From NCBI GenBank assembly GCA_965153285.1, contig OZ229115.1: a stretch of DNA of 64,000 nt, one strand, 5' to 3'. How positions within the stretch are numbered: position 1 is the first letter of the stretch; every line of letters starts with the position of its first letter. The position numbers and the translations under genes are program-made. A model generated the notes under the pieces. The model was not told where the DNA came from and ran no database searches. It was given only the letters and a program-made list of their open reading frames with translations. Below are positions 10,422 to 41,909 of this stretch, in pieces. The DNA is from Podarcis tiliguerta. Lineage: Eukaryota.

Positions 10422-10500
10422 GCAGCATGCATAGAGTTTCCAGGCAGTCTTCCATCTAGAAACTGGCTGGATCCAGACCTGCTTAGCTTCAGCAGGGTCC
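10422..10500 (-). mobile_element. Degraded 5S rRNA-derived SINE head or 5S pseudogene
   Basis: TTCCAGGCAGTCTTCCATCTAGAAACT...CCTGCTTAGCTTC aligns by eye to the reverse complement of the 5S internal control region (TCCCAGGCGGTCTCCCATCCAAGTACT...CCTGCTTAGCTTC). Confidence 0.65.
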
Positions 10501-12062: not shown

Positions 12063-12264
12063 GTGAATATGATAAAAGATGATGGAACAGTTATTCATTT
12101 CAACAATCCCAAGGTCCAGGCTTCGCTTTCTGCAAATACATTTGCAATTACTGGTCATGCTGAAGCTAAACCAATTACGGAAATGCTGCCTGGCATCTTA
12201 AGCCAGCTGGGTGCTGACAGCTTAACAAGTCTCAGAAAGTTAGCTGAACAGTTCCCAAGGCAAG
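12063..12264 (+). CDS. BTF3L4: BTF3L4 coding exon 3 (NAC domain)
   Basis: [67 protein letters not shown]; 202 nt. Confidence 0.98.
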
Positions 12265-20045: not shown

Positions 20046-22989
20046 TTGATCTGTTTCCTCTGGTGTTGAGATGTTCACCAAAAGCAAAGAGAGTTCACTT
20101 TGTTGGTAAGCTTCCATCATACTGCTTCTGCTTTGGGCCTTGAGGCATAAGTGTTTCAATGTTGTAATCTGCCCCCTGGGACCAGAGGAGAAGTGGCAGT
20201 GGCAAAAGTCCCAGCTTGATAACAAGCTATAGATTGTTGTGCATGTAAGCCTCCGGGGATGGTTTTTGTAAAGGAAAAAAGCAAATAACAGGCAAAAACC
20301 TTCATAGTTCCCTCCTCTCTTTAAATTAAGGGTTAAATCGGATGTATGAAGGTTGCAACACAACATAGTGAGACTTGCTTCCATCTGGAGTACCATTTGG
20401 AAGCTGACGAAATCAGAATCTCAAACAATTGTCTTAATAAAACTGAGCAAACAAAATCCTAATGCTAAAAATAAGCAAAAGATCAATGTGTATTTTTTTC
20501 TGTATTCAGATTTTTTTTACCCCTCATTATAGTAATTCTAAAAACAGCCACCTTTCAGGGATATATTCCCAAGGGAGAAAGCTAATCACCATGTTTCATT
20601 GTATGTTCCCTGCCATGTTTGTATATTTACCATGGTGCAATCAAAGAACTGTGTTTCACAGTCACATCACACACAAAACCAGCCAACAAGCTGATGCAGT
20701 AATAGCAGATACTTATAAACTTGTTTCCTTGAACGTAGCCTTTGACAGATGCCACCTACATTTTGTTTTCAAATTTCATTCAGAATTGCCCAATACAAGC
20801 TTTACAACAGTCACAGAGTTTCAGTGGGCATGATTTAGCTGCTGTATCTGTAGATGCCGGAAACAGCTGTTCACTATATTATGTAGGGAATTCTATACTG
20901 TACTGTATGTTTCCTAGATTCTATTGAGAAGCAAACTAAGGTTCACATAACATCCCAGTTCTAAATACAGTTATTTGGAAGCAAGTCACAATATGGTCAT
21001 ACTGTTATTAAGACAACTGAAATGCCACAAAGTGATGAGTAAGCTTTTGAATTTGCAAAATTTATTCAGGCTGAAGGATATTGGCCCCCTGCAATCCATC
21101 TTAACAATGTTACAAACTATAGGTTTTCAGGTTTTTACATCATGCCCCACTTTCCTTCCTCCTCTTACATACCTAGCTGCTTCTTCCACCCCACTTCTTT
21201 GTCTCTTTGCACTATGTTTTCCCCAACCCCTCACATTCAAAGTTGTCAGATAACTATTTTTCACTCCTCAACATGACCTAATGCAGGGGTGAGGAGTCTC
21301 TTGTGGATTTCAGTGGGACATATGTCTTAGGAATAGGACTTTCAAGGCTGAAATCCTAAACAAATTTGCTAGTTTGGGGACTGTTTATTGGACTGGGAGA
21401 GCTTGTTGTCAAACTTTGGCATGGTGGTGGTGGACATGCCAGTGGTGGGTAGGGCCAGAAGCAAACATGGGCAGAGCAACAAATATGAAGTAGCTTTGTA
21501 CAGTAAGCTAGTTCTTCTGTCTTCCATCCAGGCAAGCAAGATGCATTATTGGAGTTCAAAAACACATTCTAGTCAAGCAAAAGCATTAAGCTGTCATGGA
21601 AAGAGTTGGTGGTGGCCTGAGGAAAGGGCATGTGTCTGGGAAAGGGGTGTGGCATGGGGAGAGCCCCAGAGGGCAGACAGGCTTGGAGGGTTCCCCACCC
21701 TGTTCTAAAGACTGCTGCAATACTTGTCCATGCTCAAGGAACTACCTCCTTACTCAATTTCCTCCCTGGCACTTCCTATAATTACAGGATACTTCAGAAA
21801 TAAACTTTTCCTCTTGCTGCTATGATTGTACCACTCCTCTATTGAATTCCATTATATGTCTTCCTGTAATTATCTAAAATGAACCTTAACATGCCATTCC
21901 ACTCAAAATTACTCAACACTGATGACATATCCTTGAAGATCCTTTATCTGTCTTGGGTGAAAACCAGTGTGAGGTTGCCATGCAATACATTTCTGTGTTT
22001 GGACCTAGCTAAAAGGGCTGATACGTTCAAACATTTACACACACACAGTATCATTTGATGACTGCAACATTGTGTGATGTGTATGCAATTGCACCATCTC
22101 AGAGTCGGATCGCCCACCGTGTCACATATCGTTGCAATACTTTTAAACAGAGTCAGTTTATTGTGAGCATCACAAGTGTGCTCAAATCAAATACAATACA
22201 AGGATATTTTATTGTACCACAAAATACTGCCTTGCAATACATTGCAGACAACCAACCCGATCCACAAGGATAGTATGTAATAATTTGATATGCATTATTT
22301 ATTTACAACATTTATACAGCGCTTTTCATAATGACTTCAAGGCAGTTTACCAAAATGTCAGCATATAAGCTAAACTTAAGTCATACGCAGCATGACTCAC
22401 CTTTACAGCTCATCCATTAATTGCTTAGAATTTGCAGACAAATCTTATCTGTGTCCACTCCAGACAAGCTTACTTTAAGAATTAGATAGCAGACATCGAA
22501 TTGAAACTTTGCAGGATAACCTGATTATTTTGACCAGATATGCACCAAAAGGGGCCAAGGGATGATAAAGCACACACTGGCCGATCTCTTAGGAACAAAG
22601 GGACGCAACGCAAAAATAAAAAAGGGGTTTGGGAAAAGCAAAGGGGTGCTTGCATGAGAGTTTGATCTGCATCAAGCAACAGGGATCCTGCATGAACTAA
22701 CGTGCAGCACATTCTTCCGAACGTGAGCACACAGCTGCGCGCGCGCGCAGGTTACACGCGCAGTGATTTCCAGCTGCGTCCTTGCTTGCGGCGGGAGGTT
22801 GACGCCTCCCCCTCCGTTTCTTTGCAATGCTTGAGTCCTCCCCTCTTAGGCGGCTGGCAAGCCAGTTGTTTGTCCTCCTCGCGCGCCGAGAGGGGTTTCC
22901 CCACAGCATCCAAATTGCCCTCTGGCGACTCCGCCTCCCAGAGGCTCGCGCGGCTGCTTGCTCCCTAAGCGGACCGGTGCCTACCTAGC

Positions 22990-23386
22990 AAGCCTCGCCT
23001 GGGCTTCCGCTTGGAAACGGAGAAATAAACGAGGAGCGGCAGCGGCGGCTCCCTCCCCGCGGCGCCGCTCTACCACGCAGCCGCGCCTGAGGAGGCCGGC
23101 CAGGCTTCCCCGCTTGTGCCGCAGTGCCGTGCGCTGCCTCTGAGGCCAGCCAGGGGGCGCTGGTTGCCGGCAGCTGAGGCGGCCTCGGAGCGGGCGAGGG
23201 AGCCCAGCCAGCCAGGAGAGGAGGCAGCCCTCGCCGTCGGGAACAGGCGGGCAAGCGGGAGGCCGGGCAGGCGCAGCGCTGGCCTTCCTTGAGCTCGGGA
23301 AGAGGCCTGCCCGGGAGCCGAGCGAGGGGAGCCTCTCCGACATGCAGGCCCGGCGGCGCTCGCTGCTGCTGCCGCCGCCTCCCGAG
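22990..23386 (+). other. ZFYVE9: ZFYVE9 leader exon 1 (5' end approximate)
   Basis: Within the CpG island; consensus donor CCCGAG|gtgagt at 23386/23387. Confidence 0.75.
23342..23386 (+). CDS. Candidate uORF/microprotein in ZFYVE9 leader, part 1 (MQARRRSLLLPPPPE)
   Basis: First ATG after position 22830, context gacATGc (purine at -3); exactly 15 codons to the exon 1 donor. Confidence 0.6.
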
Positions 23387-26300
23387 GTGAGTAAGCTGCT
23401 GGCCGCCTCCCGATTTAGCCGGTCTCCGTCGGGCCGCTAAGGCCGGGCATACTCTCCCAGGCCCCTGTGGGGCGGCGTGAGAAGGGAGCCTCTCTTGGTA
23501 GGGGGCCGCCCCACGGCTCCTGAGGAGAGGAAGCTGAGGGAACCTTCCGCCCAAAAAGGGCTAGAGGCGACATAACTGAGGGTCGGAGCGCGTTCGCCCA
23601 CAGCACACCTTGGGTCAGTTCCGCCGCCCCCCAACCTTAGGGGCGCGAGTTTCCCTCCTTCCTACTAGGGATCATGAAAGCCTCGGGACCTTGAGAATAG
23701 AGGCAGGCGAGGAGCTTCTCGTCCCGGCTTATCCCTCGCCTTGTTTGTCTGGCTTGTCCTGATGGAGCGGGTTGGGGGGGGAAGAGAGCCCTGCTCCCTT
23801 CATGGCAACCGGGAAGCCTTCCGCGAGGAGTTCCTGGCTTCTCGTTTATAGCGCTTCCCACCCCTCTTAATAGCTCAGGGGGTGAGCGAGAAGACGTGGC
23901 AGCCCCCCGCGCCGCCGCCCCAAACAAACAAGCCAGCAAGCCTTTTCATACCGCTTCTGTTAATTAGTAGATTCCCCTCCCCCATACATCCAGCCCCCCC
24001 CCGCTCCGTAGAGCATATGCATCGCCTTTTCACAGTCCTTGCTTGTTTTTGCAGTTGTGCATTCTTGCAGCCCCTTTCTTTCCTGTCCTGCTGCTTTACA
24101 GGCAGCTCCCATTTGTTCGCAGCCCAAGTTTCTCATACTGGATCTGATGGGAATATTGCTGTCAAGGTGTCCCATTTTGTGCCCGAAGTACCTTCCCTTG
24201 CTCTGGCGTCGTTTGTTGCAGCCTGTTCACTATTTAAATAATTTGAAACGTGCCATAACTGCCGAAATAGAGCGCTTACCAGGAGGCAAGGTTACTTTTA
24301 ATTGTGTGTGTTGTTGCACTCACTTGAGTGATACTCACCTTGGTGATAAAATTCAGGTATTTTTTAGTTCTGTGGATGTGGGTAAGTAGGTCCAGATGAC
24401 TGGTTGCAATGGAGGGACTGCATATCTTGTAACATGAATAACTGATGGGAATTACCTTGATAAGTTTGAATGTTTAGGTATTTTGCATATATGTAAACAA
24501 ATAGTATTTGCATGTACCGAAATAGAAGTATATATAACAGATTATATTTATTAATATATTTAAACAAGGTGAAGTTCCACATGTAAAATGTCCACAAAAC
24601 TTGAATGGTATTGTGGTGTTAGTGCAGATTTTCATATCTGAACCTGCTGCTATTTATTTGTGACTTAAGATGGATGCAAAATTTCAAAGAGCCTGGTAGA
24701 GTGAGTAAGGGAAACATGGAGGTCACACTAAAGGTTATAAGGACAGCAGGTTGATTATTTTTAGCACATAGACATCTAGAAGGATAATATATTTATTATG
24801 TAAAATATCAAAATCTGAATATAGGTGCATGAAAGTGGAGTGCTTATTTGGATTGTACTGAAAACTGTTAGGTTGTCTGAGCTTGGTCCACCATAGATAA
24901 AACTGCTTTTATTGATCAGCAACACATAGATGCACACATGTGGTAGTGAATTAGTGTTTGTTTCTCTGGTGTGGATTTAATATCACATGCCTTATATCAG
25001 TATAATTTAATGGCCAGGATTTACTAAACTAAAAATGTATTTACACTTGATTAAACTTAGTACAGTAGACAAAAAACTTTAGATCTTGATATCTGGTAAA
25101 TGCTGGCACAATTAAGAGGGCTCTTCAATGGCCCAGAGGTCCTTTAAATGTTGCTCAGCTGCACAGAAGCATTTCATTAAAAAAGCAGCTCTCACTTGAC
25201 CAAAATTTAAAGGGCCCCATAGAGATCTGGTTTTTCAAAAGGAACTTTACTTCACTGATAATTGCAGCATGTCTCATGGCATCAAATCTAGGCTTTGGTT
25301 TAGTCTCATGCTTGAAATCTTACTGAAATTTATTTAAAGATTGTGAATGTCTATGCTGTTTCTTTTTTAAAATGCAAAATATTTAATCCTTCCATAATCC
25401 ATGAAGCTCTAAATCTAAGCAAATATAATTTAACATATAACTTATGCAGGCTTTACATTATTTTAATAAATTAATTCTTAGTGCATAAGTAAAGGATGAA
25501 CTATTCAGAGCAGATGCTTTTCAGCATGTATTTTAGCATTTATGTTCTCATTGTTCTTTTACATTTGAAAATGAAAGTGTATAACTAGACCACTGGGTTC
25601 CTTAGATGAAAAATGTAAATGGATGCAGAAATATATGCTGAAGTCAACAGGCAAATTATATGGCTTACTAGAGCAGGATTGCTAACAGCTAAGAATTTTT
25701 ATGCCAACATCTAACTGTTTGGATAAAGTATAACTAACAATATTTATTTTAGAATAATATTTCAAAACAGGCTTACAGGTAAATATTTAGGATTGGAATA
25801 GCAGAAACAGTGATAAAGTATGTATGTATCCCTGTAGTTGTGAATGGTCCTGTGCGAAGGGTTATGGAAGAACTTTAATCTACTTAAGCTGCGGTCTTAA
25901 CACACACCTACAAGGAAATAAACCTAATTAAACATAGTGGGATTTACTTTTAGGTAAATATGCATAGAATTCCTTTGTTAGAGCTGGAAGGTTATAACTT
26001 GACCAATCTGCCTCATTTTAATAAGAGCATAAGAGCCTGCTGGATGTAGTCTAGCACCCTGTCTCATAGTGGTCAACCAGCTGCTCTAATGGAAGCCCAT
26101 AAGCCATGTTAAAATTATCAGTTTATACCACCTTTGTATAAGCAAAGTTATGGATATTAGGGCGCTATACTATACTTTTTTCATGGTGCTGGTATTAAGG
26201 CAGTTTTTAACCCACCAGCCCAAGCCCAAGTTAGTAGTTTGTGGTTTAAAATAAAAATAAACACAGTTTATTTGTTGTAAATATCCTTATCAAGTGGCTT

Positions 26301-29300
26301 GAAGGCAATTTTTACTCACACAGGAGACCAAGCAGCTATTTACAAACCGTATACAAAGGTGTTGAAACAAGTCTCTAGTAATTTTGACTTCGTTTTGCTA
26401 AATGAAACCTGGGAGTAGATGCAAAAGTTTTTGGAGCGTGTGGCCACGAGTGAAATTTTGGAAACTGTTTGAAATGCTCAGTGAACAGTAGTTGCCTAAA
26501 CCTTTTAATTTATGTAAGAAGATGTGAAAGATCGAAGCAAACAGTGTTTCTCTGCCGATGGAAGGCATTTTTTATAGAAGTAGAGGGCCAGCAATTCTTC
26601 CTCCCTGCCTGCTCCCCAAAATTTGCTGAGGTTTTGGGGAACCCCTTGGAGCAAATTTCTGGGGGTTTGCAGGAGGGAATTTATTTCCTTCACCAATGAA
26701 GGAACACCAATTGAATTCTATTCAAAGTAATACAGTATTTAATTTTCTCCATCATTGTGTGTTTAGAAGGACTATAGGTAGCTGTCTTATACAAGTCAGA
26801 CCATTGGTCCACCAAGCTTAGTATTGCTCCTAATGGTGTCTCCAGGTAGGGCTGGAAAAGACTCCTGACTGAAACACTGGAGAGCCAGTTCCTAAAAGCC
26901 AAGCTCTAGCAGCTATGTAGCTTAGGATGCATGTTTAGCTGCTACTGAAGTAGAGTCATAGGGTGTGATTGATTATGATTACATGTATGTTTATTTTAAT
27001 TCACAGTAAGTCTCTCTTCAAGATGACCAATCACAATAAGCATATGAGGAAAATAGTTGAGTCATAAGTACTGTGACCTATTTATTTGTTTAAAGTATTT
27101 ATTTCCTGCCCCTTCATTGTAAAAGCAGTGCTCAGGATATGAAAGAAACAAAACAAAATTGCATATTTTTAAACAAGCAAGATTGGGGAATATCACAGCA
27201 GGGTTGTGGGGTCAGTACAATAAAAGTGTGTGGAGTCAGTACAATAAACACATCTGTCCAACAGGCCAGACTTGCCCCAGAACACAAGTGTCTTCACTAT
27301 GTACTAGACAATTATTTGGGTGAAACAAACCTCCTTTGAGTAAGAACTTTCACAGCTTAGATGTGATCCCAAGAAGGTTGTCTTCCACATTTCAACCAGG
27401 AACCTCTCTTCCACTGGTAGAACATAGAGAAGAATCTCTCCTGGAGATGTTAATGAGGAGAACTGCTCTGATTGGAGGAGGCAGTCCTTTAGATTAAATA
27501 ATAAATCTTTAGATAAAGGTAATTAACAGTAGCTGGAATTGTAAAGAAGTTTGCGCAAGTACGCTTTCCCAACGGAATATATATTGTATGTTTTTGATTA
27601 AACAAAAATAGCTTTTAAGAGCAAGACCCTAATTATATACAGACTTTGCAAGTTCCTGTCAATGGGACTTGCTTACCAGTACTTCAAAGATTCAGTACTG
27701 GTAGGTTAAGCCTATTTTGAATAATGGGAAAATAATGGACTTTTGTAGAAAAAAAGAATGCTTTGCTCTCAAACTCCTTAAAGGCATCTGGCCTCAGAAG
27801 GTCTGGCCTTTGTATTCTGTTTGTAGACATCTTTTTAGTAATAGCTGTGGAAATTGAGCTTCATTAAATGACCCATTTAATTTTTTTAAAACAAAACCTT
27901 CACTGCCTCCATCTAATTAACTAAGAAGTTGAGTGGAAGGTTTGTTTTAGTTCAGTCTGTCAGCTCCTACGGTGAGATTGTACTGCTACTTTACAAATTA
28001 TTTAAAAAAAAAACAGATTAGTTTATGTGCTGTGGAAAACAAAGCATGTATCCAGAAATGTAATAAAAAGCAGTGTGTGTTTTTGTCTTGGTGCAAATGT
28101 TAAGAAAGCTGGTCCATATGTCAGCTTCTTAGTGAGTGTACCTGAGGCAAGTACTCATGCTGCAAATTTTGCATAGTGTGTATGTGGGGGGAGGATAATT
28201 CCTGTCTGGTTCACCTCATACAGTTATCTGTCACATTTGTTTCAGTTGAGAGGAACAGCTGGCCTAGAGGTGCTGTTTTTACTGCAACTGGTACTTATAA
28301 ACTAAAATAGGAGGTCCTATATATTTTTTGTGTTTGCATACTGTTGTGACTTCTTGGATAAGCATTGTTTACTTTTTGTGGTCCATTACTTTCAATTGCT
28401 TTAGTGCAGATCTAGGCCAGTACAAAAGAAGAAGGGTTAAATGCATGTCTCAAGCACAATAGCTTTTGTTTTGTCACTGGAGTGGCAGATGGGAAACCAG
28501 AATCTCTTACATTCCCGCATACATTGACTATGGGGGAGAGGCATTTACCATCAGCTGATGATCTTAAAATTAGACTTCATTTGAGCCTGTGCTTCTTGAG
28601 TGTTCTGTAATAAAAAGCATGTTTATTGTATCAATGCACTTAAAATTTTATACAGATGATTACATTTTGAGCTAATGTATGCTGTAGAATCATCTTCTAA
28701 ATTGACTGAAATTCATATAAAGATATGAAGTAAACCTATGAATTGGTTGTATTTTGCTTTATTGCACAGTATTCAAATACATCAATTTTCTAGATATGTT
28801 AAATGTCTCTTCTGGTATACAGCCTTTTTTTGTTAGAACATCTGTAACTGTCAGAAACCTCTGTGCTGATTCCCCCCCCCCCCATAATATAGCAAACATA
28901 GAAATCCGTAATGTTCCCTGTAAAAGGCAGATCAAAGTGCTGTACAAATCTCCTAATAGCTGTGCCTAGCTATGAATGACACTTCCTCGTTATAAACACT
29001 TTCATATTTTCTGATTTCACTTTGCTGTGTCAAAATTTTGCTTTGAACTCACTCGTAGCTGTGTTCACCTAGCTGGCTGTACGCTGTTTGGTATACAATT
29101 ACTATGTAGGATCAGTAGGATGAAAGCTTGTTTAGATGTTTAGTTGTCTTATGTTTGCAGTACTGTTCGCACCAACATTCTAAAATTCATAAGACTGAAG
29201 TTAATTATTCTGCATCTCCCAGTCCTTACATCACTCCCTGTCCTCCTATTCATTCTGCTATTAAATTGAGAGTGAATATGGCATAATGATTCTTTTGTGT

Positions 29301-29649
29301 TGTTTATCTCTTCACCTTGTTGTCATGGTGCCATCCCCTTTTGCTGGATATTCTGCATCCTTGGTGTACCTTGGCTCATGGGACTATTGGGTCATGAATA
29401 ATCTTCATGAGAAGAAATGTTTTATGTATATGCCTGCTGCACATTGAAACGCCAAAATAAGCCTTTTCCCAGATAGCCTTTTAGTAAAATGTCTACTCAA
29501 CACAAAATATGCATAGTACTCAACTTATCACCACTTTGGCATAACATCCATCACTCATTTTCACTATATAATTGCACTTTGCTCTACTCATGCTTAACTC
29601 TGATCTAATTTCTCTCCACCTCTCCACATTTGGACTCCGTAATTATTGA

Positions 29650-29775
29650 TCATAGAATTGTAGAGTTGGAAGGGATCACGAGGATCATCTAGTCCAACCC
29701 CCTGCAATGCAGGAATGTTGCCCAACATGGGGCTGAAACCCATGACCCTAAGAGTTTCATGCTCTACTTACTGAG
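29650..29775 (-). mobile_element. tRNA/CR1-tail SINE fragment
   Basis: CATAGAATTGTAGAGTTGGAAGGGA...CATCTAGTCCAACCCCCTGC is a reverse CR1-like 3' end, followed by a reverse tRNA-like head. Confidence 0.7.
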
Positions 29776-30094
29776 GAAGAGAGAACAATGTTGCAAGTCT
29801 CTATTGATGATGGAACCAGGAATAGGAAAAAGCAGCACAAAACATGTTGACCAGGGACTGCGTCATAGCATAGGAAAGGTAGAGAGTAGGGCTGGGTTAT
29901 AAATCAGTATATCATCCCAAACTGTTTTTGAATTCACATTGTGATAACTGTTTTGACCTGGCAATATATCACGAGGGAAATTTGGACAAAACAATTGGAA
30001 ACTGATGACTTCCCCATGGGGTGGCTCGGCTGAACCAAGACTTTTCTCTGCAGGAAGGGTAGAATCTCTACTGCTGGGATTAAAATATGTAGAG

Positions 30095-30280
30095 CAGGGG
30101 TAGTCAACCTTTTTATACCTACTGCCCACTAATGCATCTTTCTTGATGGTAAAATTTCCTTGCCGCCCACCAGTGCTCGATGGAAGGAGGATTCAGCTTG
30201 TGCCGTAGAACCCCCTACCACCCACCTAGAATCCTGAAACGCCCACTAGTGGGCGGTAGGGACCAGGTTGACAACCCCTG
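30095..30280. mobile_element. hAT MITE (nested)
   Basis: TIRs CAGGGGTAGTCAACCT...AGGTTGACAACCCCTG. Confidence 0.85.
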
Positions 30281-30281
30281 A

Positions 30282-30337
<56 letters not shown>
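30282..30337. repeat. (AAT)n microsatellite, tail of a minus-strand L2/CR1-type 3' end extending to ~30480
   Basis: About 18 perfect AAT units followed by TTTATTTATATCCTGCCCTCCCC...GGCTCAGAGCGGCTAAC. Confidence 0.85.
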
Positions 30338-30339
<2 letters not shown>

Positions 30340-31269
30340 TTATTTATATCCTGCCCTCCCCAGCCGAAGCCGGGCTCAGAGCGGCTAACATCAAATGTAT
30401 AACATTAACATAAAATCAGACAATCAATTAAAATACATCCTCATATCAGATCAGGATCAGAATAAAATCCAATCAGATGGCAACCAGATCAGATGGAAGG
30501 GGACTTCCCTCTCCCAAATTGCACACACACAAGTTTGGAGAGGGGAAGGCCAAACAGCACACCACCATCTCCCTGCTTTGCTTGCTTGCTTGCTCGCCTC
30601 CCTCCCCAGCGCCACAGTCCCTTCTCCTTGCACTGAGGGAGGCGGCAGACGTGCATCTTTGCCTCAGAGCTGCTCCCCCACTACCACCCCTGACGCTCCC
30701 ATCCCTGCTACCACCTCTTCTCCCATGCCCTCAGTTCTGTGGTCAGCTTTCCCACAATGTGGGAAAAACCGTGAAGCTAGTCAATGCTTCTCAATTCCTG
30801 TTACTCGTCTTCTGCATGTGCGTGTGTGTGCACGCATTCATGTGTTTGTCTGTCTCCCTGTGCTAAGAATCTGAATATAGGGGTGGGAGTTCCCCCTCCA
30901 GGGTCTGTCTCTTCTGCTTTCCTTCTCTATTCCACCCCATCCAGAAACTGACACGAGGTTTGCCTAGTTCTTCCTCCCCACCTCTCTCTGTCTGGGTAGC
31001 AGTTGCCAGGACATTACCCCATTTGCTTCTACATGGTTCCATCCTTATTTCAGGCATCGTTATATATCTGTATATCACAGTATGTAGCTGGTATATCACA
31101 ATGTTCAAAACCAGATATCGTCCAGCCCTAGGGAAAGAACAGTGTGTAGGAATGAAGTGATTAGGACCCATTCCCATTGGCATAATTTTGAGGATTATTG
31201 TAGTCAGTGAATACACACAATGGTTCTGTGGTGTTGAAAATGTATTTTAATGTAGTGTGATGGGCACAT

Positions 31270-31520
31270 ACCCACAGCCTTGTGGTACATCTTCAGGAGA
31301 AGAAAAGACTAAGGAGTAAACCCTACACCTATCTGGAATGGAGTCTGTAAGATGACTGAATAATGTTTTGTATACCTCCTTCTGGCAACTCCTGCAGCCA
31401 AGCTGGTACCAAACATATTGCTCTGCTTTCCTTAGCAAGGCTGAGAGGGGGTCTTGTTGTCTGGGCAGCCTAGGACCTGCCCAGACTTTTGCCCCGGAGA
31501 AGTCACTTGGGTCTGCCATT
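31270..31520 (+). mobile_element. RTE-related non-autonomous element fragment
   Basis: GGTACATCTTCAGGAGAAGAAAAG...CTGGCAACTCCTGCAGCCAAGCTGG...TCTGGGCAGCC resembles a common lizard repeat; family assignment from memory. Confidence 0.5.
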
Positions 31521-31733
31521 TTTAAAATTTCTGCAGGCATCAAAGTATGCCAGTCAAATTGATAGTCCTGTTCTGTATGATTATTTTCCATTACACATTT
31601 GTATTTATTTGGTTTTGGTATTTAATTTCTCATGTCACTCTATTAATTTGAGTCAGAGAGGAGGGAAGGTACACTAACCAGAGGGACAGTTACCCGGTGG
31701 CTTAGTTGAATGCTTCTGTGGAAAGATGTACAC

Positions 31734-31915
31734 CAGGGGTGTCCAAAAGACTGCAATCTACTTCCACTATAAAGAAACTGGCAGTGATCTACCCATTGGA
31801 TTTGACCAGAGCTGTTGAGCTTTTTTGCGGGGGAGAGATCAGAGTAGTTGAGCTTTTTTTAGGGAGAGAGGTCAGATCGACCGGTAGATCGCGATCAACC
31901 AGTTGGACAGGCCTG
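31734..31915. mobile_element. hAT MITE with intact TSD
   Basis: TIRs CAGGGGTGTCCAA...TTGGACAGGCCTG; 8-bp TSD ATGTACAC at 31726-31733 and 31916-31923. Confidence 0.92.
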
Positions 31916-32763
31916 ATGTACACAATCTAGGAACAAGGATACATTGAAGAGCTCAAGTTGCAGCCCTCATGTTTTGCCATCTTCTGCGTACTTTTGGCAA
32001 AAACTTATTCCTGGTTATTTCCTTAAGACTATTTCGTCCATACTTTGGTGTTAGTCTCCAGCCAATCTGGTAAAAAGTTAATCCTATCACAGAAAACTTG
32101 GTTTATTATAATAAGAAAGTCATGTTTCCTAATGAAAGTGAGAACCACTATAGATTAGGTGCCCAAATCTTTTATTACCTGAGATGAATAAGTACAAATT
32201 TCTGTTGTAGGCATAAGCAAGTGTTACCAGTTAAGCTAGTGAGAAAATGGCAAGTCTTTTCAAGTTTGTATCTAGCAACTTATTGTGATGCCTTTGTAGT
32301 CTTAGGGCTTGTTTACTCTTCTAAAGTTGCTTTTGACTGTGTTTCGGGACGCACATTTACACAAGGATGCATGGCCTCATAAAGAGACTAGATGCAGTTC
32401 AGGATAATAAACTAGTTTAAGCCCATCTTACCTCCTGCCTCTTCATGAGATCAGATGTGTGCTGTCTACACCTTATTTGGGAAAGGAAAGTTGATAGTTC
32501 ATCTGTGTAACTGCTGTGGAGATTTGGGAGCATGTGTTGGAGACAAGGAATAATTGGTATCTTTTTGGTGGGGGGCTTTCTTTGGTGGCCACTTAAATGT
32601 AGTGGAGCGAAGGTTATGTTATCAAATTGTTTTTAATAGGTTTCAGAGGGGGGAAATCTTACCCTAACTTGGCTTTCAAGATGAGGCAGGCTGAAAATAG
32701 CTAAACTACATACAACTAATAGCAGCTTTAGGAATTCTAATGTGGTGTTTGTTTCATTTTTAG

Positions 32764-32859
32764 GATCAAGCAGAATATACAGATTCAATTCAACTAGCTG
32801 ATTGGGCAGTGTATATCATGGATAGACATTGGTTCATTCGTTTCTTTATGCATGTGTAG
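32764..32859 (+). CDS. Candidate uORF/microprotein in ZFYVE9 leader, part 2 (DQAEYTDSIQLADWAVYIMDRHWFIRFFMHV*)
   Basis: Open for 31 codons in the frame entering from exon 1; TAG at 32857-32859; internal in-frame ATG at 32818 in strong context atcATGG. Confidence 0.6.
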   Translation, partial: DQAEYTDSIQLADWAVYIMDRHWFIRFFMHV

Positions 32860-32868
32860 GAGAAAAAG
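32764..32868 (+). other. ZFYVE9: ZFYVE9 leader exon 2 (105 nt)
   Basis: ttcatttttag|GATCAAGCAG...GAAAAAG|gtaaga; resembles the human ZFYVE9 5' UTR exon as recalled. Confidence 0.8.
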
Positions 32869-34686
32869 GTAAGAGGATGGCAAATGACAGTATACATCTG
32901 GAATATTTGAATTAAGAGAGCGCCTTTAAATTTGCATCCTTGGTATGCTTCTTATATTGCAGTCCTAAACAGATCAGAAATTTATTTATTTATTGAGCTT
33001 CTGGCCTGCTGTTCCTTCTAGGGCAACAAACAACCAAGCAGGAAAACATATTTTCAGCCCAGAGCCTTCCACAATAAGAGTTATGAATCAGTCTAATTTC
33101 TAGTAATGTTTCTAGGGTGTTTTGTTTAAAGCAAGGACAAGGAAGCTGTGGCCCTCAATATATTATTACTTTTATAATTGCTGGCCACAATAGTGTTCTG
33201 CAATAGAATCATGCATTTTTAAATTTAAAGTTTAGAGTTTCCTGTTTGTAAGAAAATTATTATGGGTGGCGACCGTTTTGGGCGTGATTGCTGATGTGCT
33301 GGTCCTTATGAACACAGAAGAAGGTGGAGGGGTGGTGCACTTATATGTGCTATGCCGACATACACAGGTTAGAAGTGGATCACCCACATGAAATGGTTGC
33401 CATCTGTACTGTAAATTTAACAACTTTTAGCTGTGCTTTTGCAGTAAATGGGTGCTGTGAATATTACATACTTACTAATTGGATTGTGAACTGAAGTGTA
33501 TTTAAGGCCATGTTTGCCTGCTTTTTCTTTAGACTTCTGGTTTTTTCCTTGAAACCTAGCTGTGGAATCAGGCACTGTCACTAAGTTCTTGATTTAATGT
33601 ATTTTGGTTGCCTTCTCCAGCACAAATGTTTGCAGGATAGATTTGGGAGAAAGTTTTAGAAAGGTGCACATAACAAGCTAGCTTTTTTGTTTCACTTATG
33701 AGGTTACATACGATATATTGAATGACTGGGTTGTCTGGTTCATTGTCTGCACGCAAGGCCTCCTATTTTGCATACCAGCACAGACTTCTTCAATGTTTAT
33801 TTGGAAGGGGGCATTAAAAATTGCAGGCTTTGCTTCTGGTTAAAGAATTGGTTGATCCCTTGACTGTGTGGAGGAACAGGTCAGTTGTGTGTACTACACT
33901 TTATCGTTACAGTGTTAATTTTAAAATTCTGTGTTCAGATTTCCTTCCCTATATAATAAACACTGTTGTAAGATATTCAAATCTCTCTTTTAATTTCTGT
34001 AAGGTCCTAGATCTTGAATAAGTCATATCAGTCACATTGCATTTAAGACTTTAGTGTGAAATAGTATTACTTCCTTGACTAATATGTTGGCTTGTTTTGA
34101 GTTGTTGTTGTTCCAGTCCACCAGGATTATGTGGTTGGCAAAGCTTAGGCTAAATGCTGTATCCTGTCATGCATTAATCTAGGTTAGATATTGTAGATGC
34201 TGCAGATTCAAGAATGCAAAGCACAATAGACAAAATATTATTGAATTAACAGGAGTCATCTTTTAAAATGTCCATTATATAATTTATTTGACTGAAATGG
34301 TCAAGAGCCCATACTACAGTAAAGCTCACTAGATAGCTTTGGACAAGTCAGTGATTTTTCAGTATAGCTTTGTTTCCTGTGGGGTTGTTAAATGTTCTAT
34401 GGAAAAGAAAGGAATATATATTTGTATAAAGTGAAGATTTCTGAACTGTCACATCTACTCCTCTTTGCAATTATTGTTTCACCTCATCCATTCAAAACTT
34501 TTTTATGTAGAGATGGTTTATAAAGTTACTTGGCCATTGAGGAGTTACCAAGATGATATTTTTATTAGGTAACATCTCCCAATGCGTCCTTGTAGTTCAA
34601 ATCTGTTATACGGATGAGAAATTTCTGGTAGCATTCTTGGGTCAAGCATTGATAATGAGTTGTGTGTATGGTCGGAAGACTGATTA

Positions 34687-34855
34687 CCATATTTTTCCGT
34701 TTATAAGATGCCCCCATGTATAAGACGCCCCTATTTTTGGGGACTCCAAATTAAGAAAACACCCCTCAGCATTACCCATGTATAAGACGAGCCCCAATTT
34801 TAAACCTAATTTTTTGGTTTAAAAACCCCTAGTCTTATACATGGAAAAAATATGA
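34687..34855. mobile_element. Mariner-type MITE
   Basis: Imperfect TIRs CCATATTTTTCCGTTTATAAGA...TCTTATACATGGAAAAAATATGA, TA flanks, internal TATAAGAC repeats. Confidence 0.75.
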
Positions 34856-35034
34856 TAATTTTTCCTGATTTGATACTTTAGTCACTACTTATTGAAATCC
34901 TGCTGATTTCTGTCTGAGTTAGTAACTGGATGCAACCCTGAGCCTGAGTGCCCAGGTTTCTGCAGTGGCCAGGAGTGCATCTGCATAGCTAAAGCCAGTG
35001 TGCTAGCTGTGCCTATTCCTGGAGATGTCTGATC

Positions 35035-35460
35035 TGCCCACAGTGACACACACCTTAGTTACATCCCATTTGAATTACTGTAACTTGCTTTACATGGGTC
35101 TGCCTTTGAAAAGTGCTAGAAAACTTTTAAAGGGCCCAAGGAGCTCCACTGGCTACTGGTCTGTATCCGGTCACAATTCAAAGTGCTGGTTGTGACCTAT
35201 AAAAACTTAAACTGCTTAGGCCTAGGCTATCTGAAGGCCCAGGGTATTTTCCCATACAAACCTGTTTGGGCTCTTGAGATGTTCAAGGTGGCCCTTCTCT
35301 CATTCCTGCCACGCTCACAGGCACCTTTTGTGGGAACGCGGGAGAGGCTGCTCCCAGACTTCCTGGTGAACCTAGACTGAACTCTGTCCTTGTGGTCCTT
35401 CCTCTGGCAGGTGAAGATTGTTTTATTCCAGCAGGCCTTTGGGAGCTGATTGCTTTTAAG
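35035..35460 (+). mobile_element. Old L2 LINE fragment
   Basis: Degenerate VTHTLVTSHLNYCNLLYMGLPLKSARKL...LHWL...QFKVLVVTYKNLNCLGLGYLK. Confidence 0.8.
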
Positions 35461-36133
35461 GAAAGGGTTTTTAATAGTGTTATGCTGTTTTTACCGTCTG
35501 TATTTTAATAGATTTATTTTTTACATTGTTTTAATTCCATTGTTGTTTAATTACTTTTCAACTATTATTGATTATAACTTTTTAGCTTTCTGTGTTTTAG
35601 CTGTGTTTCTCCAATCTGGACAAATCTAGTTTTTATTCTTTTGTTTATTTATTCCCCACATTTCCCCCAGAACCGGGGCTCAAGGCAGCTTACAAAAATT
35701 AAAACAACGCTAGGCGATGCAGAAGGTGGGGTCTAGATTAGGACTGATGCCATCATGTGATGGCACTGGGGCTCACTGAAGATCCAGTAGTCCTGAGCCC
35801 GCTTAGTGCCCTTCCCCCTCTCCTACTAGAGCACACACACCTGGTCTGGTGGGTAGAATGGGGGAGCTCTGCTTTGGTAGAAGGAGTAGATACTAATGGA
35901 GGCTGGCAGTGTTAGGCAGTAAATTGGTTTCAGTAGTTGATACATATTAATTTTGTTTCAAAGTTATTAATAATTGCCATTGTGAAGCTCACTGAATGTG
36001 TTCATTTAGGAAGTCCTGCAATGTTTCATATTTTACATAGGATCTTAGTTTTAGTGGATACATAAAAGAATAGATTGGTACATTTTCTATCATCATGCCA
36101 GTCATCCTGCTGTCATTTAACCAAATTTATATA

Positions 36134-36374
36134 CAGTGGTACCTCGGTTTACAAACTTAATCCATTCTGGAAGTCTGTTCTTAAACCGAAACCGTTCTTA
36201 AACCAAGGTGCGCTTTCCCTAATGAGGCCTCACACTGCCGTTGCCCTTCCACCGTTCAGATTCCATTCTTAGACAGAGGTAAAGTTTGCAAACCGGGACA
36301 CTATTTCTGGTTTTGCAGAGTTTGTAAACTGAATCGTTCTTAAACCAGACTGTTCTTAATCCAAGGCACCACTG
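36134..36374. mobile_element. Tc1/mariner (Tigger-like) MITE
   Basis: TIRs CAGTGGTACCTCGG...CCAAGGCACCACTG, TA duplications. Confidence 0.88.
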
Positions 36375-37266
36375 TACTACTTAACTCAAACAAAAACTCT
36401 CTAAGTTGCTTACAAAAGACTTTTATTTCCAAAAGTTAGCTAAGAGTGTGATTCCAAGTGAGTTGTAGGTTGGGGTGTGAAGTGACAGATTGTATTCTAT
36501 TTTTAATCCTATGTTGGCTAGCACTGGCAAGGTTGGAGGTGTAAGGACAGACTTGTCTTCTTCTTGGCTCCCAGGGAGCCTTTTCTTTTTTAAAAGAAAT
36601 GGCTTCTAATGGAGAGGGAAATTAGATATACCAGTTCCAGAGTGGCATGGATACAGACCTGATCCTGTCTCGGCCAGTCATACTCTGCCCTTGGAGTGCC
36701 TTGTTTCAGGGCCTAACATTGATTACTGCTAGTGAAAATAGAACTGTGCCTATGGATCTTTCCCACATAACGTCCCCCCTCTCCAATGGAGACATCTTCA
36801 CTGCCATCAGAGGGGCTCCTCCATGCAACCCTAACCCCTTCCATCCATTAGATCTGTGAGTTAGGATTCCCCTTCCCCTTCCTGTCTTTAGAAAGAAAAG
36901 GAACAATATGATTTTATTAGGGTTTTTAAAAATATTAATAATAATAATAATACTTGCAGCAAATAACTGATAAAACCAAAATAAATCCTTAAGTCCCTTC
37001 TTAGTTTAGAAGGCTTCTAATTTATTTGTATATCTGGCTGATATGGATGAGGCATTAGGAATTAGAGGATCAATACAGTTTCATCGTCACAGTTTTGTAA
37101 TACTGGGAAATGCTTTTGATTTTATAGGAAATAGTCAAACTAGCTTAAATTTTAAGCTTGGTAATCTCTAAATCTTGTGATGGGACATTGGAATATTGCT
37201 AGAAGTTCATAACTGGCTGTCTGCTTGACAGGTTCAGACAAGGAGCTGGGTGGCATTTCCTGACAA

Positions 37267-37336
37267 ATGGAGAACTATTTCCAGGCAGAGGCTTTTAACC
37301 TTGATAAGGTTTTAGATGAATTTGAACAAAATGAAG
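37267..37336 (+). CDS. ZFYVE9: ZFYVE9 (SARA) first coding exon (exon 3 starts at 37232)
   Basis: ATG GAG AAC TAT TTC... = MENYFQAEAFNLDKVLDEFEQNE(D), the SARA N-terminus; G|gtgagt. Confidence 0.97.
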
Positions 37337-37853
37337 GTGAGTAACTTTTGTTAGGGCTGGAGATGCAAACTAATATCTGGATCTGTGACTCTGGTTGTAT
37401 TTCTTTGTATTTCCTGTTCCATTGTAACTAACATCTGTTATGCATTTGCTGGGAATAAAAGTCTGAAAAGGATACTGAGAAATCTACAATTTCTTTCTAG
37501 GTAGAAACAGTTAAAATAATTGTCTTTAAAATTTCAGTGATTACCTGAATGATATCCCTGTATTAATTGGGTGTCAAACATTGGCACAATTGCATAGATA
37601 TATAATTCACAGGTGAGAATTGCTTGCAGCTAGAGCTAGTACAGATAAGATTAGCTGTCTGTGCATAAGAAGTAATCAGCTTCCATCCGCTCTTTTGCCA
37701 CCCAGAATGCACATACTTCCAGATCAATCCCCCATTTTACACTAAGTTCAGTGTTACATTTCATTGTGCTCCTAGTTATCACAAGTCTTAACTAGCGTTT
37801 GCAACACTGATTAATTGTCTGTTTCCTATACCTATGACTCTGCTAACTGAAGG

Positions 37854-37911
37854 CTAAAATTTGCACATAATACTAACATAAACTAAAATTTGCACATAAT
37901 ACTAACATAAA
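37854..37911. repeat. Perfect 29-bp tandem duplication
   Basis: CTAAAATTTGCACATAATACTAACATAAA twice. Confidence 0.9.
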
Positions 37912-40900
37912 CTGTGGCTTAGCACAAATGAGCAAATGTGTGGGTCCAGGGGATTGTGACCACTGCCGTTTTTCCCTGCTCCTGCTGCCACTGCGCTACC
38001 CAGGACTAAGCCATAGTTCGGCTTAGCCTTGCATTTGAACCCAGGCTCATGGTCTCTCTCTCCTCCAGATGAACCAGGAGTGGTAAACCAAGAACAAATA
38101 TTGGTTACAGCTTGTTGTTTGTGTTAGCATTTGGATTACATCACAAAGTAATAATAGTAAACTCCCTGAGTAATCACAAATAACTAGGGGGGAATTCAGC
38201 TTCACGCTGTTACAAATGTTCCATCTGTACAAGCGTATCAGTTTCCCAGATGGAATGATCCCTTGCTCTTGTGTGCATGTTTTGGGGATTCTCCCAACCC
38301 CTTGAGCAACCCCTTATAGATATTGCATGTGTTGGAGGGGAAAGCCCTGTTGTGGAAGCCTTCCTCTAATGGGGTTTGGTAGGTGTATTCCTCCCTAGGT
38401 TCTGTGGCTTGTTGTAGGAATACAAGATCTTATTAACTTACTAACTACATTACTAAATGTGTACATTGAGGAGGGAGAAGAAAAAATGGCATTCACACAA
38501 TACCGAAACATCAAACATGTTTTGTAAAATTAAATTCCCAAGTGCTTTGTTTGTCTGTGATTGCTGTATTCCCTGTTACGTGATTTGTATGTAGCTAAGT
38601 CACTTTCCCCCTTATGCTATGCTAGTTCACTGTTCTGTTGTGAATGCCTGCTAAAACATGGATAGGATTTATCATTGTATAATTTGTACAAGTAGGGCAT
38701 TCTCTGGCATGAAAAGTGTAACAATGGAAACAGGGAAACCCAAAAAGAGCTTGGCTGGATTAGATGAAAGGTCTGTCAAGTTCAGCATCCTGTTTCTCAC
38801 ATAAACCAAAGAGGTGCCTTTGGGGAGATTATAAGTAGGCTATTTCCACTCCCACTTTTTCTCCCCAAGACCTAGTAATGTGGTATACTGCTTCCAGACA
38901 TGGAGGCTTCATATAGTCATCATAACTAATAGGCATTGTTAGACTAATTGATGGAAGGTCTAATCCCATTTTTAAAGCCATCACAGCTAATGGTCATCTT
39001 GTGGCACCACATGCCATTAATAAATAAATAGCTTTTCTAAGGAAAAACACAACCTTTGGTGTTTAATGACTCCAACTACAGAAGCAATCAAAGTGCTATT
39101 TGAGAGTTAATGTGATTTGGTTACCTTTTTTGGCCAACATTTATTCGCTAGTTGGGCTGATAGAAATTGCTTTCTTAGGGCTTGTCCACGCTGTAGTGTT
39201 CTTCTGAGAAACGAAAATAGTTTTAGTCTGTGGGTATAACTCATAGACTAATTGCTTTCCTGAGTGGTTTCCCTTTTTATGGTGCTAAATGATGTATTTG
39301 CAAAAAGCAGATATGATTCCTGGATTGCTGTTTGAGAAAGCACTGCAGCAGCCTGAAGGGCGGATGCTGGAGGAAGGACGGTTGGAGAGGCAAAAAGCAG
39401 CACCTTTTGGGGAGTGTGAGAACTAAATTTTGAGAGGGTTTTTGCTTTTGCTGTTGCTGGCATTGAGCATTGTGTGCCAAGAAGATATCATCGTCAGCCA
39501 CATGTGGCTGAATTGGGTGAATCTGTCTCTTTATCCAGCCGTTCTTCAGTGGGTGGAGAAGTTGCAGTTCTTCATTTATTATTATTTTTTATATTTACTA
39601 AATTGCATACTGCCCTTCATCCACCGATCTCAGGGTAGTTCACCTGAATGCTGTAGTGACAGATTTTGCTCCCCAGAAAGGGTCTCTGCTTCCTCCCCAG
39701 TCACTACTGCAGCTGAAGAGTTCTTAAAACACTCACCACCTTAAACTGGTATAGCACTGCAAATTTGTTACCATATGAATACCAAAATAGTTTTGATTGG
39801 TTTATGTTTGTGTGCATTGTGTGCATACTTTGATGAAGTATTTATATTTTGGCCATGGTTTAGATTGCAAACTGGCAGCCAAGCTAGATGATATTAGAAA
39901 TGCATGTTCTCCTTTAATGTGGCCTGCTTTAAAAAAATTAATTGGGGGGGGGGGTGGAGGGTGTGTGAACCCTCCACTGCTATTTGCCCTGAGGGAGAAG
40001 CTGCCATTGGTGACAGTGGCAACTTTCCTTTCTGGTAAATAGCAGCATCTGTATCGTGTGTATAAAAAGAACCATGGTGCGGGGGAAAGGGTCAAACTCC
40101 AGTTTTTAAGCATTGTAGCTCCAGTCCTGATGAGCTTCTTAATGTTTGCTATTCCTCCCTCCCAAAAAAAGACATGTGAAATGCGACCATGCATTTCTCA
40201 TTTTGTCTAGTTTTAGCCAGAACAGCATATACAGTTGGCAGCAGTATATTAACTAATGGACTTTCTGTGCTTGGGCCCTATTACCTCTACAGAGATTTTC
40301 AGTATAGTATGTGATTTTTTTTTTATTATATGTGGAACAAACATGCATTTATTTAATTTTACATGATCTCTGTTTTGATTTTGGCAAGTGGAGAATGTAT
40401 AAAGCAGTTTATTCTAGTGTTTCCGCAGTGTTCCTAAGCTATATAGTTATGTAAAACACTTAAGAATTGCTATACAGTTAACAATGCCATCTACAAAGGG
40501 AACAGTAAATAGAAATGCTTTTGCTTCCACAATATTTTTCAGTATAAGAAGCGATTTGCAATTATTTTAATCTCATTTATTCTTACGATAATTCTGTGAA
40601 GTTAGCTAAAGCTGCAAGATGATGTCTTGCCCAAGGTCACCCAATTAGCTTTAAGATTAAACAGGAATTTCAATGTGCTTTTGAGTCTCCAAAATTGACA
40701 TTCAGTTCAGTTTGCTGTGCTATATTGTCCCCAGCGTCTTTGAATAACTTATATGATGTCAATTCTTGTTTGGGTTTTACATGTTTGTCTTAATTAATGC
40801 TGTTGTTTTCTACTTCCTCTGGTTTGCAGCTAAATATATCAATCAAGATGTTAAGATTACGTATTCCCATAAAATGTGTATTATAAAGAAATATTTCTGT

Positions 40901-41802: not shown

Positions 41803-41909
41803 TATTATGTATTTTCCTTTGATATACAAACATTTGAACTTCTTGTGCAAAGTACAAGTTACATATGCTGAATTTATTGCATATTGATTTAAGTTACTTA
41901 TCTTTTCAG

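What the first reader, a model, noticed from the sequence alone, without database searches (positions are those of the whole stretch)
23342..32859. Spliced 46-aa upstream ORF (candidate conserved microprotein) in the ZFYVE9/SARA 5' leader
Seen: there is no ATG between ~22830 and 23342, so 23342 (gacATGc) is probably the first AUG scanned. Exactly 15 codons reach the exon 1 donor, and splicing over a 9.4-kb intron to exon 2 keeps the frame open for 31 more codons to TAG 32857-32859: MQARRRSLLLPPPPE|DQAEYTDSIQLADWAVYIMDRHWFIRFFMHV*. The stop is 44 nt (9+35) upstream of the main AUG at 37267, in another frame. The ORF fills nearly all of the supposedly non-coding exon 2 and a six-frame scan cannot see it. 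From memory (unverified), human exon 2 reads in the same frame roughly DQxEHTESAGLAGGAADIMSKHREVCSLSRV*, with the same length, the IM..H motif and the terminal V-stop. Inference: an amniote-conserved uORF that throttles translation of a TGF-beta/Smad scaffold and/or encodes a microprotein from a bicistronic mRNA.
Basis: partly seen in the sequence, partly recalled or inferred. Interest (0 to 1): 0.85.

Follow-up and report, generated by a model that had tools for sequence, protein, structure and literature searches.

The report
Lizard copy of catalogued ZFYVE9 uORF
The small two-exon reading frame ahead of the lizard ZFYVE9 (SARA) start codon is real in the sequence and is the counterpart of a human upstream ORF already listed as translated and conserved, so it extends a known feature to reptiles and is not a discovery.

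Summary
ATG 23342 is followed by 15 codons to a consensus donor (GAG|GTGAGT, 23386/7). An acceptor lies at 32763/4, then 31 codons run to TAG 32857-59, which is 44 nt of spliced leader before the ZFYVE9 start at 37267 and in another frame.

Spliced contigs from three runs of a related lizard show exon 2 (32764-32868) as a sharp 105-nt exon joined to exon 3. One contig continues 224 nt upstream of the acceptor, in an exon that ends in AG, as exon 1 does. The exon 1-exon 2 joint itself was not seen.

Within the window alone the open frame is near chance (P 0.13-0.20). Its meaning comes from comparison. [quoted passage not shown]
- it was found in 4 of 7 Ribo-seq studies;
- one mass-spectrometry peptide crosses its exon junction;
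- Sandmann et al. 2023 class it as "conserved".

By eye, lizard and human share 12 of 31 residues in exon 2, without gaps and with the same stop position, and 7 of 10 in exon 1. The last nine residues are almost wholly different.

Best reading: a conserved, translated, mainly cis-acting uORF. A functional microprotein is not excluded but is unlikely. Already known; modest interest.

The parts
22830..23341 (+). G+C-rich (71%) ATG-free stretch upstream of the uAUG; probable promoter CpG island and exon 1 leader. Transcription start not mapped.
   Evidence: no ATG in 512 nt, which is not beyond chance (P=0.29). The X1 contig carries 224 nt upstream of exon 2; if these are exon 1, it reaches back to about 23163.
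23342..23386 (+). Exon-1 part of the uORF: AUG plus 14 codons, ending at a consensus donor (GAG|GTGAGT).
   Evidence: The donor is the best of 591 GT sites in 22001-32700 and the only island donor whose exon ends in AG. By eye it shares 7 of the 10 human exon-1 residues (M..RRR.LL..E), with 5 extra in-frame codons in the lizard.
23387..32763 (+). Intron 1, 9377 nt, GT..AG.
   Evidence: The acceptor is used in RNA contigs. The joint to 23386 is inferred, not seen.
32764..32868 (+). Leader exon 2, 105 nt.
   Evidence: contigs of X1, X2 and X3 cover exactly this exon with 0 differences and join it to 37232. Their alignment runs 2 nt (AG) into the intron, so the upstream exon ends in AG.
32764..32859 (+). 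Exon-2 part of the uORF: 31 codons plus TAG.
   Evidence: By eye 12/31 residues are identical to the exon-2 part of human c1riboseqorf100, ungapped and with the same stop position.
32818..32859 (+). Nested in-frame 13-codon ORF from an AUG in strong context (atcATGg), using the same stop.
   Evidence: It is the counterpart of the human 13-aa ZFYVE9 uORF in Sandmann et al. Table S4 (540 P-sites, 78% in frame, age 'vertebrata').
32852..32868 (+). Start of a third upstream ORF (AUG in poor context, tgcATGt). Read exon by exon, it continues into exon 3, overlaps the main AUG out of frame and stops at TAA 37296-37298 (27 codons).
   Evidence: frames worked out exon by exon from the printed sequence.
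37232..37336 (+). Exon 3: 35 nt of leader, then the main ZFYVE9 start at 37267 (context acaaATGg) and 23 codons.
   Evidence: joint with exon 2; tblastn with gecko ZFYVE9, 95% over residues 1-22.

Best explanation
This is the wall-lizard orthologue of the human ZFYVE9 upstream ORF listed as GENCODE Ribo-seq ORF c1riboseqorf100. Scanning ribosomes meet the AUG at 23342 in an adequate context (G at -3), translate 46 codons across the exon 1/exon 2 junction and stop at UAG, 44 nt before the main AUG. Ribosomes that leak past this AUG meet an in-frame AUG at 32818 in a strong context and stop at the same UAG.

The conserved features are the architecture: the start near the exon 1 donor, the phase-0 junction, 31 codons in exon 2 and the stop position. 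The peptide is much less conserved. The element therefore most likely acts in cis. It captures ribosomes, makes main-ORF translation depend on leaky scanning or on inefficient reinitiation over a short spacer, and carries ribosomes past the out-of-frame AUG at 32852 that overlaps the main start.

Shown: the ORF; exon 2 and its joint to exon 3; similarity to the human ORF; translation of the human ORF (from the literature).
Inferred: the exon 1-exon 2 joint; translation in the lizard; the repressive effect.
For: - The sequence is as described.
- Exon 2 is a real exon spliced to exon 3 in contigs of three runs. The upstream exon ends in AG and at least 224 nt lie upstream of exon 2 in one contig.
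- Donor 23387 is the best candidate by far.
- Human c1riboseqorf100 has the same two-exon layout (10 + 31 codons). It is a Phase I ORF found by Ji 2015, van Heesch 2019, Martinez 2020 and Gaertner 2020, with one MS peptide across the junction (column legend).
- Sandmann et al. 2023 class it as 'conserved', meaning conservation score >= 8 over non-primate mammals at FDR < 0.01.
- The nested 13-aa ORF has 540 P-sites, 78% in frame, age 'vertebrata', and footprints in rat heart and liver.
- By eye, lizard and human share 12/31 residues in exon 2 without gaps and 7/10 in exon 1. My hand-summed ungapped BLOSUM62 score is 46, roughly E 6e-5 for 31 x 31.
- The indel in exon 1 is in frame (5 codons).
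- From established knowledge (Kozak's work on reinitiation), long uORFs and short spacers make reinitiation poor.
Against: - The exon 1-exon 2 joint and the transcription start were not seen.
- No lizard footprints or reporter data exist.
- Within the window the ORF is not beyond chance.
- Conservation could be at the nucleotide level. I had no orthologous nucleotide sequences, so no dN/dS or PhyloCSF of my own.
- The 3' third of the ORF, next to the stop, is the least conserved part, which is odd if termination context were the selected feature.
- In mouse and rat the nested ORF is shorter (9 and 8 against the human 13, as listed), so the stop position is not fixed in all amniotes.
Confidence: 0.6

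Rival explanations
1. The 46-aa product is itself a functional, amniote-conserved microprotein acting in trans, and the mRNA is truly bicistronic.
For: - A human MS peptide spans the exon junction.
- Sandmann et al. class the ORF as 'conserved'.
- PhyloCSF in primates is +9.58.
- The first 22 exon-2 residues are 50% identical between lizard and human, and the exon-1 part keeps the pattern M..RRR.LL..E.
- There are no indels in exon 2, and the exon 1 indel is in frame.
Against: - Overall identity is 12/31 in exon 2, with radical changes.
- The C-terminal nine residues are hydrophobic and aromatic in the lizard and hydrophilic in human, with 1/9 identical.
- PhyloCSF across mammals is -443.81, in the range of the 'young' ORFs listed beside it. 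Other 'conserved' uORFs in that table are also negative, so the measure discriminates poorly.
- Rodents have a shorter ORF.
- No related small protein was found among 1.84 billion representatives, apart from an artefact gene call on a short contig that matches the window exactly.
- ZFYVE9 does not occur in the held (partly truncated) supplementary files of the conserved-sORF study of Mackowiak et al. 2015.
Confidence: 0.12
2. Exon 2 is conserved for a nucleotide-level reason, such as splicing control of a cassette leader exon or protein or RNA binding. The open frame is then a by-product whose translation has no selected role.
For: - An open frame of this length arises in 13-20% of comparable sequences.
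- The exon-2 contigs of X2 and X3 are 162-nt pieces bounded by branches on both sides, as expected for a cassette exon.
- Peptide similarity of about 40% is what about 70% nucleotide identity would give in any frame.
Against: - The AUG lies in another exon and is conserved together with its neighbouring codons.
- The start, the frame across an in-frame indel, and the stop position are all kept in two lineages about 320 million years apart.
- Human footprints are in frame (78%) and were found in four studies.
- Exon 2 has no stable fold (z = +0.45) and there is no Rfam match.
Confidence: 0.2
3. It is a chance ORF in the lizard, with exon 1 not joined to exon 2 or the AUG not in the mRNA, and no relation to the human ORF.
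For: The joint and the transcription start were not observed. The window statistics are unremarkable.
Against: - The upstream exon ends in AG and is at least 224 nt long.
- The consensus donor is unique.
- The exon-1 codons resemble the human ones, and the exon-2 similarity has E of about 6e-5 by hand calculation.
Confidence: 0.05

Closest known systems
Human ZFYVE9 uORF c1riboseqorf100 (GENCODE Ribo-seq ORF catalogue, Mudge et al., preprint 10.1101/2021.06.10.447896; evolutionary classification in Sandmann et al. 2023, PMC10032668)
   Same: Same gene. Same two-exon layout, with the AUG shortly before the exon 1 donor, a phase-0 junction and 31 codons plus stop in exon 2. The in-frame internal AUG is at the same codon (19 of exon 2). 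By eye 12/31 and 7/10 residues are identical, and both end in V followed by the stop.
   Different: The lizard has 15 codons in exon 1 instead of 10 (46 aa against 41). The C-terminal third is unrelated in character. The human leader has a further, young uORF starting upstream (c1riboseqorf99), and the lizard has no ATG in the 512 nt upstream. There are no translation data for the lizard.
Human 13-aa ZFYVE9 uORF (ENST00000371591_44_83) in Sandmann et al. 2023, Table S4
   Same: Counterpart of the nested ORF 32818-32859: same length (13 codons), same stop, start at the conserved Met.
   Different: Only M, H and V are shared between the two 13-mers. In mouse and rat the ORF is listed as shorter.
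Conserved-peptide uORFs that stall ribosomes (for example AMD1/SAMDC MAGDIS, CHOP/DDIT3, plant CPuORFs; Takahashi et al. 2020, PMC7530721)
   Same: An upstream ORF kept over long evolutionary distance in a regulatory gene.
   Different: In those uORFs the C-terminal residues next to the stop are the conserved and active part. Here that part is the least conserved (1/9). No stalling data exist.
Bicistronic uORF microproteins (MIEF1-MP, MKKS uORFs, ASNSD1-uORF)
   Same: A translated uORF with some MS evidence in human.
   Different: Those have strong protein-level conservation and have been promoted to annotated CDS. This one remains an unannotated Ribo-seq ORF with weak peptide conservation.

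Membership tests
Orthologue of human ZFYVE9 uORF c1riboseqorf100 | Lies in the 5' leader of the ZFYVE9 orthologue, upstream of the MENYF start | tested here: met
   Exons 3 and 4 match ZFYVE9 of gecko, birds and mammals. BTF3L4-type exons lie upstream (8314-12263); two rodent or unnamed gene models that fuse BTF3-type and ZFYVE9 sequence fit the same neighbour order.
Orthologue of human ZFYVE9 uORF c1riboseqorf100 | Two-exon ORF: AUG near the exon 1 donor, phase-0 junction, 31 codons plus stop in exon 2 | tested here: inconclusive
   The genomic sequence fits exactly. The exon 2 acceptor and the exon 2-3 joint are seen in contigs, and the upstream exon ends in AG. The best donor is 23387. The joint 23386/32764 itself was not displayed.
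Orthologue of human ZFYVE9 uORF c1riboseqorf100 | Peptide similarity to the human ORF | tested here: met
   Comparison by eye of the window translation with the published peptide: 12/31 ungapped in exon 2 and 7/10 in exon 1. The hand-summed BLOSUM62 score is 46.
Translated uORF (Ribo-seq ORF) | In-frame ribosome footprints over the ORF | not testable with these tools
   Known only for human (4 of 7 studies) and, for the nested ORF, rat heart and liver. No lizard Ribo-seq is available here.
Conserved-peptide uORF (peptide-dependent stalling) | Conserved residues at the C-terminal end next to the stop; peptide-dependent repression | tested here: not met
   The last nine residues share only the final V between lizard and human. 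Repression was not tested.
Functional microprotein | Protein-coding type of constraint (dN/dS well below 1, positive PhyloCSF over a deep alignment) | not tested
Published values are PhyloCSF +9.58 in primates and -443.81 in mammals.
Functional microprotein | Stable peptide detected | not testable with these tools
   One human MS study (van Heesch 2019) with a junction-spanning peptide, as listed. Nothing is available for the lizard.

The most novel reading that the evidence does not exclude
The ORF encodes a functional microprotein kept since the common ancestor of mammals and reptiles. Its conserved part would be the basic N-terminus and the acidic middle (M..RRR.LL..E-DQ.E.T.S..LA..A..IM..H), with a freely evolving tail. 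ZFYVE9 mRNA would then be bicistronic across amniotes.
Probability: 0.12. Interest if true: 0.55.

Novelty: already known. Interest (0 to 1): 0.27.

Why it matters
ZFYVE9 (SARA) is the endosomal anchor that presents Smad2/3 to the TGF-beta receptor, so control of its dosage is of interest. The lizard sequence adds one useful fact to a catalogue entry that nobody seems to have studied on its own. The full two-exon architecture (start, frame, 31 codons in exon 2, stop position) is present in a squamate, about 320 million years from human, while the peptide has changed at 60% of the exon-2 positions. That pattern points to selection on the act of translating this uORF more than on its product. 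It makes ZFYVE9 a reasonable, but not exceptional, candidate for a reporter study of uORF control. It opens no new question.

Tried and rejected

3. phmmer of the exon-2 peptide against 1.84 billion representatives gave one true hit, P0001. It is a 56-aa gene call on a 943-nt Logan contig that reads from the intron through exon 2 into intron 2 with both TAG codons translated as Q. That is an artefact, not a transcript. The other two hits are repeat proteins.

4. The search for homologous proteins with P0001 found only P0001 itself, so no called small ORF in the collection shares 5-residue words with it. This blank says little, because such short ORFs are rarely called.

No orthologous leader DNA could be fetched and no dN/dS or PhyloCSF was computed. 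Some unnamed Logan proteins may come from primates. I fetched no contig for any of them, and no contig taken for human was saved or compared.

6. The human peptide letters were read only in published tables and compared by eye.

7. Read laying did not print the loose end at 32764, so the letters upstream of exon 2 remain unseen.

8. Differences of the DNA run X8 inside exon 2 cannot be judged. None is listed between 32674 and 33049, but 117 rows were hidden.

9. ZFYVE9 does not occur in the held (partly truncated) supplements of Mackowiak et al. 2015. No supplements are held for Takahashi et al. 2020 or for the neurodevelopmental-disorder 5' UTR reporter-assay paper. van Heesch 2019 is not held.

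10. An RNA-structure explanation got no support: fold z = +0.45 and no Rfam match in 22000-38000.

11. Calibrating the published mammalian PhyloCSF score against other conserved uORFs failed, because those are negative too.
Full report
**What is in the sequence.** The window comes from a wall lizard (Podarcis) according to earlier notes of this scan; I did not verify the species.

- ATG at 23342 (context gacATGc), then 15 codons to 23386, followed by GTGAGT.
- An acceptor tttttAG ending at 32763.
- A 105-nt exon 2 (32764-32868) whose frame 0 is open for 31 codons to TAG 32857-59.
- Nine more bases to a GTAAGA donor.
- Exon 3 from 37232, with 35 nt before the main ATG at 37267.

The main ORF starts MENYFQAEAF.., the ZFYVE9 N-terminus. 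The 2-kb exon 4 (about 41909-43987) finds ZFYVE9 of lizards, gecko, birds, mammals, frogs and fish. BTF3L4-type exons lie upstream at 8314-12263.

The uORF stop is 44 nt of spliced leader before the main AUG, in another frame. No ATG occurs between 22830 and 23341.

**Is it more than chance?** Not within the window alone. The ATG-free 512 nt have P=0.29 at 71% G+C. A frame open for 31 or more codons arises in 13% of dinucleotide shuffles of exon 2 and in 20% of AG-anchored 105-mers from the flanking introns. Exon 2 has no unusual fold (z=+0.45) and there is no Rfam match in 22000-38000.

**Transcript evidence.** No run is on record as RNA. Three small runs of one related organism (X1-X3) nevertheless carry contigs with a GT..AG joint from 32868 to 37232, and a DNA run (X8) does not. 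Those three runs are therefore cDNA.

- Exon 2 appears with sharp ends and no differences from the window. The orthologous intron pieces differ by about 2.6%. Exon 3 is equally unchanged: the one listed mismatch sits in the four bases past its donor and probably belongs to exon 4.
- The 3365-nt X1 contig continues 224 nt beyond the 5' end of exon 2, with letters that are not in 32400-32763. The acceptor is therefore used and a substantial upstream exon exists.
- In all three runs the alignment runs two bases (AG) into the intron, so the upstream exon ends in AG, as the proposed exon 1 (..GAG) does.
- The donor at 23387 is the best of 591 GT sites in the 10.7 kb upstream of exon 2 by an approximate consensus matrix. 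It is also the only one in the CpG island whose exon ends in AG.
I put it at about 90%, mostly because of the similarity of exon 1 to human described below.
- In X2 and X3 the exon-2 contig is a 162-nt piece with about 30 nt of each neighbouring exon. That is what a graph assembler leaves at a cassette exon, but unspliced pre-mRNA would give the same picture. Whether exon 2 is sometimes skipped stays open.

**What is known.** Full-text search finds no paper on a ZFYVE9 uORF as such, but the catalogues have it.

- Table S2 of the GENCODE Ribo-seq ORF roadmap (preprint 10.1101/2021.06.10.447896) lists c1riboseqorf100. It is a Phase I uORF of ZFYVE9 on NM_004799, made of 30 nt at the end of exon 1 and 96 nt at the start of exon 2 (41 aa).
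- It was found in four of seven Ribo-seq studies (Ji 2015, van Heesch 2019, Martinez 2020, Gaertner 2020).
- One mass-spectrometry peptide crosses the exon junction.
- Sandmann et al. 2023 (PMC10032668) class it as 'conserved'. Their conservation score is at least 8 over non-primate mammals, a class that holds only 4-5% of uORFs. PhyloCSF is +9.58 in primates and -443.81 in mammals.
- Their Table S4 lists the nested 13-aa ORF from the internal Met: 540 P-sites, 78% in frame, age 'vertebrata', footprints in rat heart and liver, but a shorter ORF in mouse and rat.
- A second human uORF that starts further upstream (c1riboseqorf99) is classed as young. The lizard has no counterpart of its AUG.

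**Comparison.** I compared the published human peptide with the window translation by eye only.

- In exon 2 the two align without gaps over all 31 positions, with 12 identities (D1, Q2, E4, T6, S8, L11, A12, A15, I18, M19, H22, V31) and the stop at the same place.
- The hand-summed BLOSUM62 score is 46, roughly E 6e-5 for a 31 x 31 comparison.
- Eleven of the identities lie in the first 22 residues. The last nine share only the final V and differ in character: aromatic and hydrophobic in the lizard, hydrophilic in human.
- At least 25 nucleotide changes in 93 are needed to explain the 19 replacements.
- In exon 1 the human ten residues match the lizard in seven (M, RRR, LL, E), and the lizard carries five extra codons, an in-frame indel.

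So the ORF architecture is shared by two lineages that split about 320 million years ago, while the peptide is only loosely kept.

**Mechanism.** The most likely reading is a translated, mainly cis-acting uORF.

- The first AUG has a purine at -3.
- The nested AUG at 32818 has the full strong context (A at -3, G at +4) and ends at the same stop.
- A third AUG at 32852, in poor context, opens a 27-codon frame that overlaps the main start out of frame (TAA 37296-98).
- The main AUG has C at -3 and G at +4.
- From established work on reinitiation, a 46-codon uORF followed by a 44-nt spacer should allow little reinitiation. Ribosomes that start at 23342 are therefore largely lost to the main ORF. 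The 13-codon ORF would be more permissive.
- Termination well upstream of later exon junctions could also expose the mRNA to nonsense-mediated decay.

All of this is inference; nothing was measured in the lizard.

**Rivals.**
- A functional microprotein (12%) has the human MS peptide and the better-conserved first two thirds in its favour. Against it are the divergent tail, the rodent truncation and the negative mammalian PhyloCSF.
- Nucleotide-level conservation with an incidental ORF (20%) fits the chance statistics. It does not fit the conserved AUG in another exon or the in-frame human footprints.
- A pure chance ORF unrelated to the human one is unlikely (5%).

**Limits.**
- Short-ORF searches returned only an artefact gene call, and their blanks mean little.

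**Verdict.** The feature is already catalogued in human and flagged there as conserved. The lizard copy extends the full architecture to squamates and suggests selection on translation of the ORF more than on its peptide. Interest is modest.

Noticed in passing
window 32818-32859: Nested in-frame 13-codon ORF whose AUG has the strongest Kozak context in the leader (atcATGg). It is the counterpart of a separately catalogued human 13-aa uORF with high in-frame footprint counts. It may be the main translated form on transcripts or ribosomes that miss the exon 1 AUG.
   Followed up: partly
window 32852-32868 and 37232-37298: A third upstream AUG (poor context) opens a 27-codon frame that crosses the exon 2/3 junction, overlaps the main AUG out of frame and stops at TAA 37296-98. 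Ribosomes translating the 46-codon uORF would pass over it.
   Followed up: partly
window 32764-32868 (records 8 and 16): In two runs exon 2 sits on 162-nt contigs that end about 30 nt into each neighbouring exon, and the exon 3 contigs break at the exon boundary. This is the assembly signature of a cassette exon, or of pre-mRNA branches. It bears on the companion note s1-830671 about exon 2 skipping; if exon 2 is skipped, the exon 1 frame runs into exon 3 and stops at TAG 37313-37315, past the main AUG.
   Followed up: partly
window 34600-34930, 35100-35270 and 36120-36450: Depth in these bins of intron 2 is hundreds to thousands of times that of the neighbouring bins in all four runs, with many loose ends. 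These are interspersed repeats, and they are also present in the cDNA runs.
   Followed up: no
window 8314-12263, + strand: Exons that match the BTF3/BTF3L4-type N-terminal part of a fused vole gene model at 73-96% identity. This fits the BTF3L4-then-ZFYVE9 neighbour order suggested by the fused models.
   Followed up: partly
P0001 (943-nt Logan contig; equals window about 32740-32910): A public gene call of 56 aa reads from intron 1 through exon 2 into intron 2 with both TAG codons translated as Q. It is a product of a gene caller using an alternative genetic code on lizard DNA, not evidence for a protein.
   Followed up: yes
window 37337-37340 and about 41909: The exon 3 contig pieces extend 4 nt past the donor with one mismatch. 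This fits an exon 4 that begins ATGA.. (codons for D-E, as in other species) at about 41907-41909.
   Followed up: no
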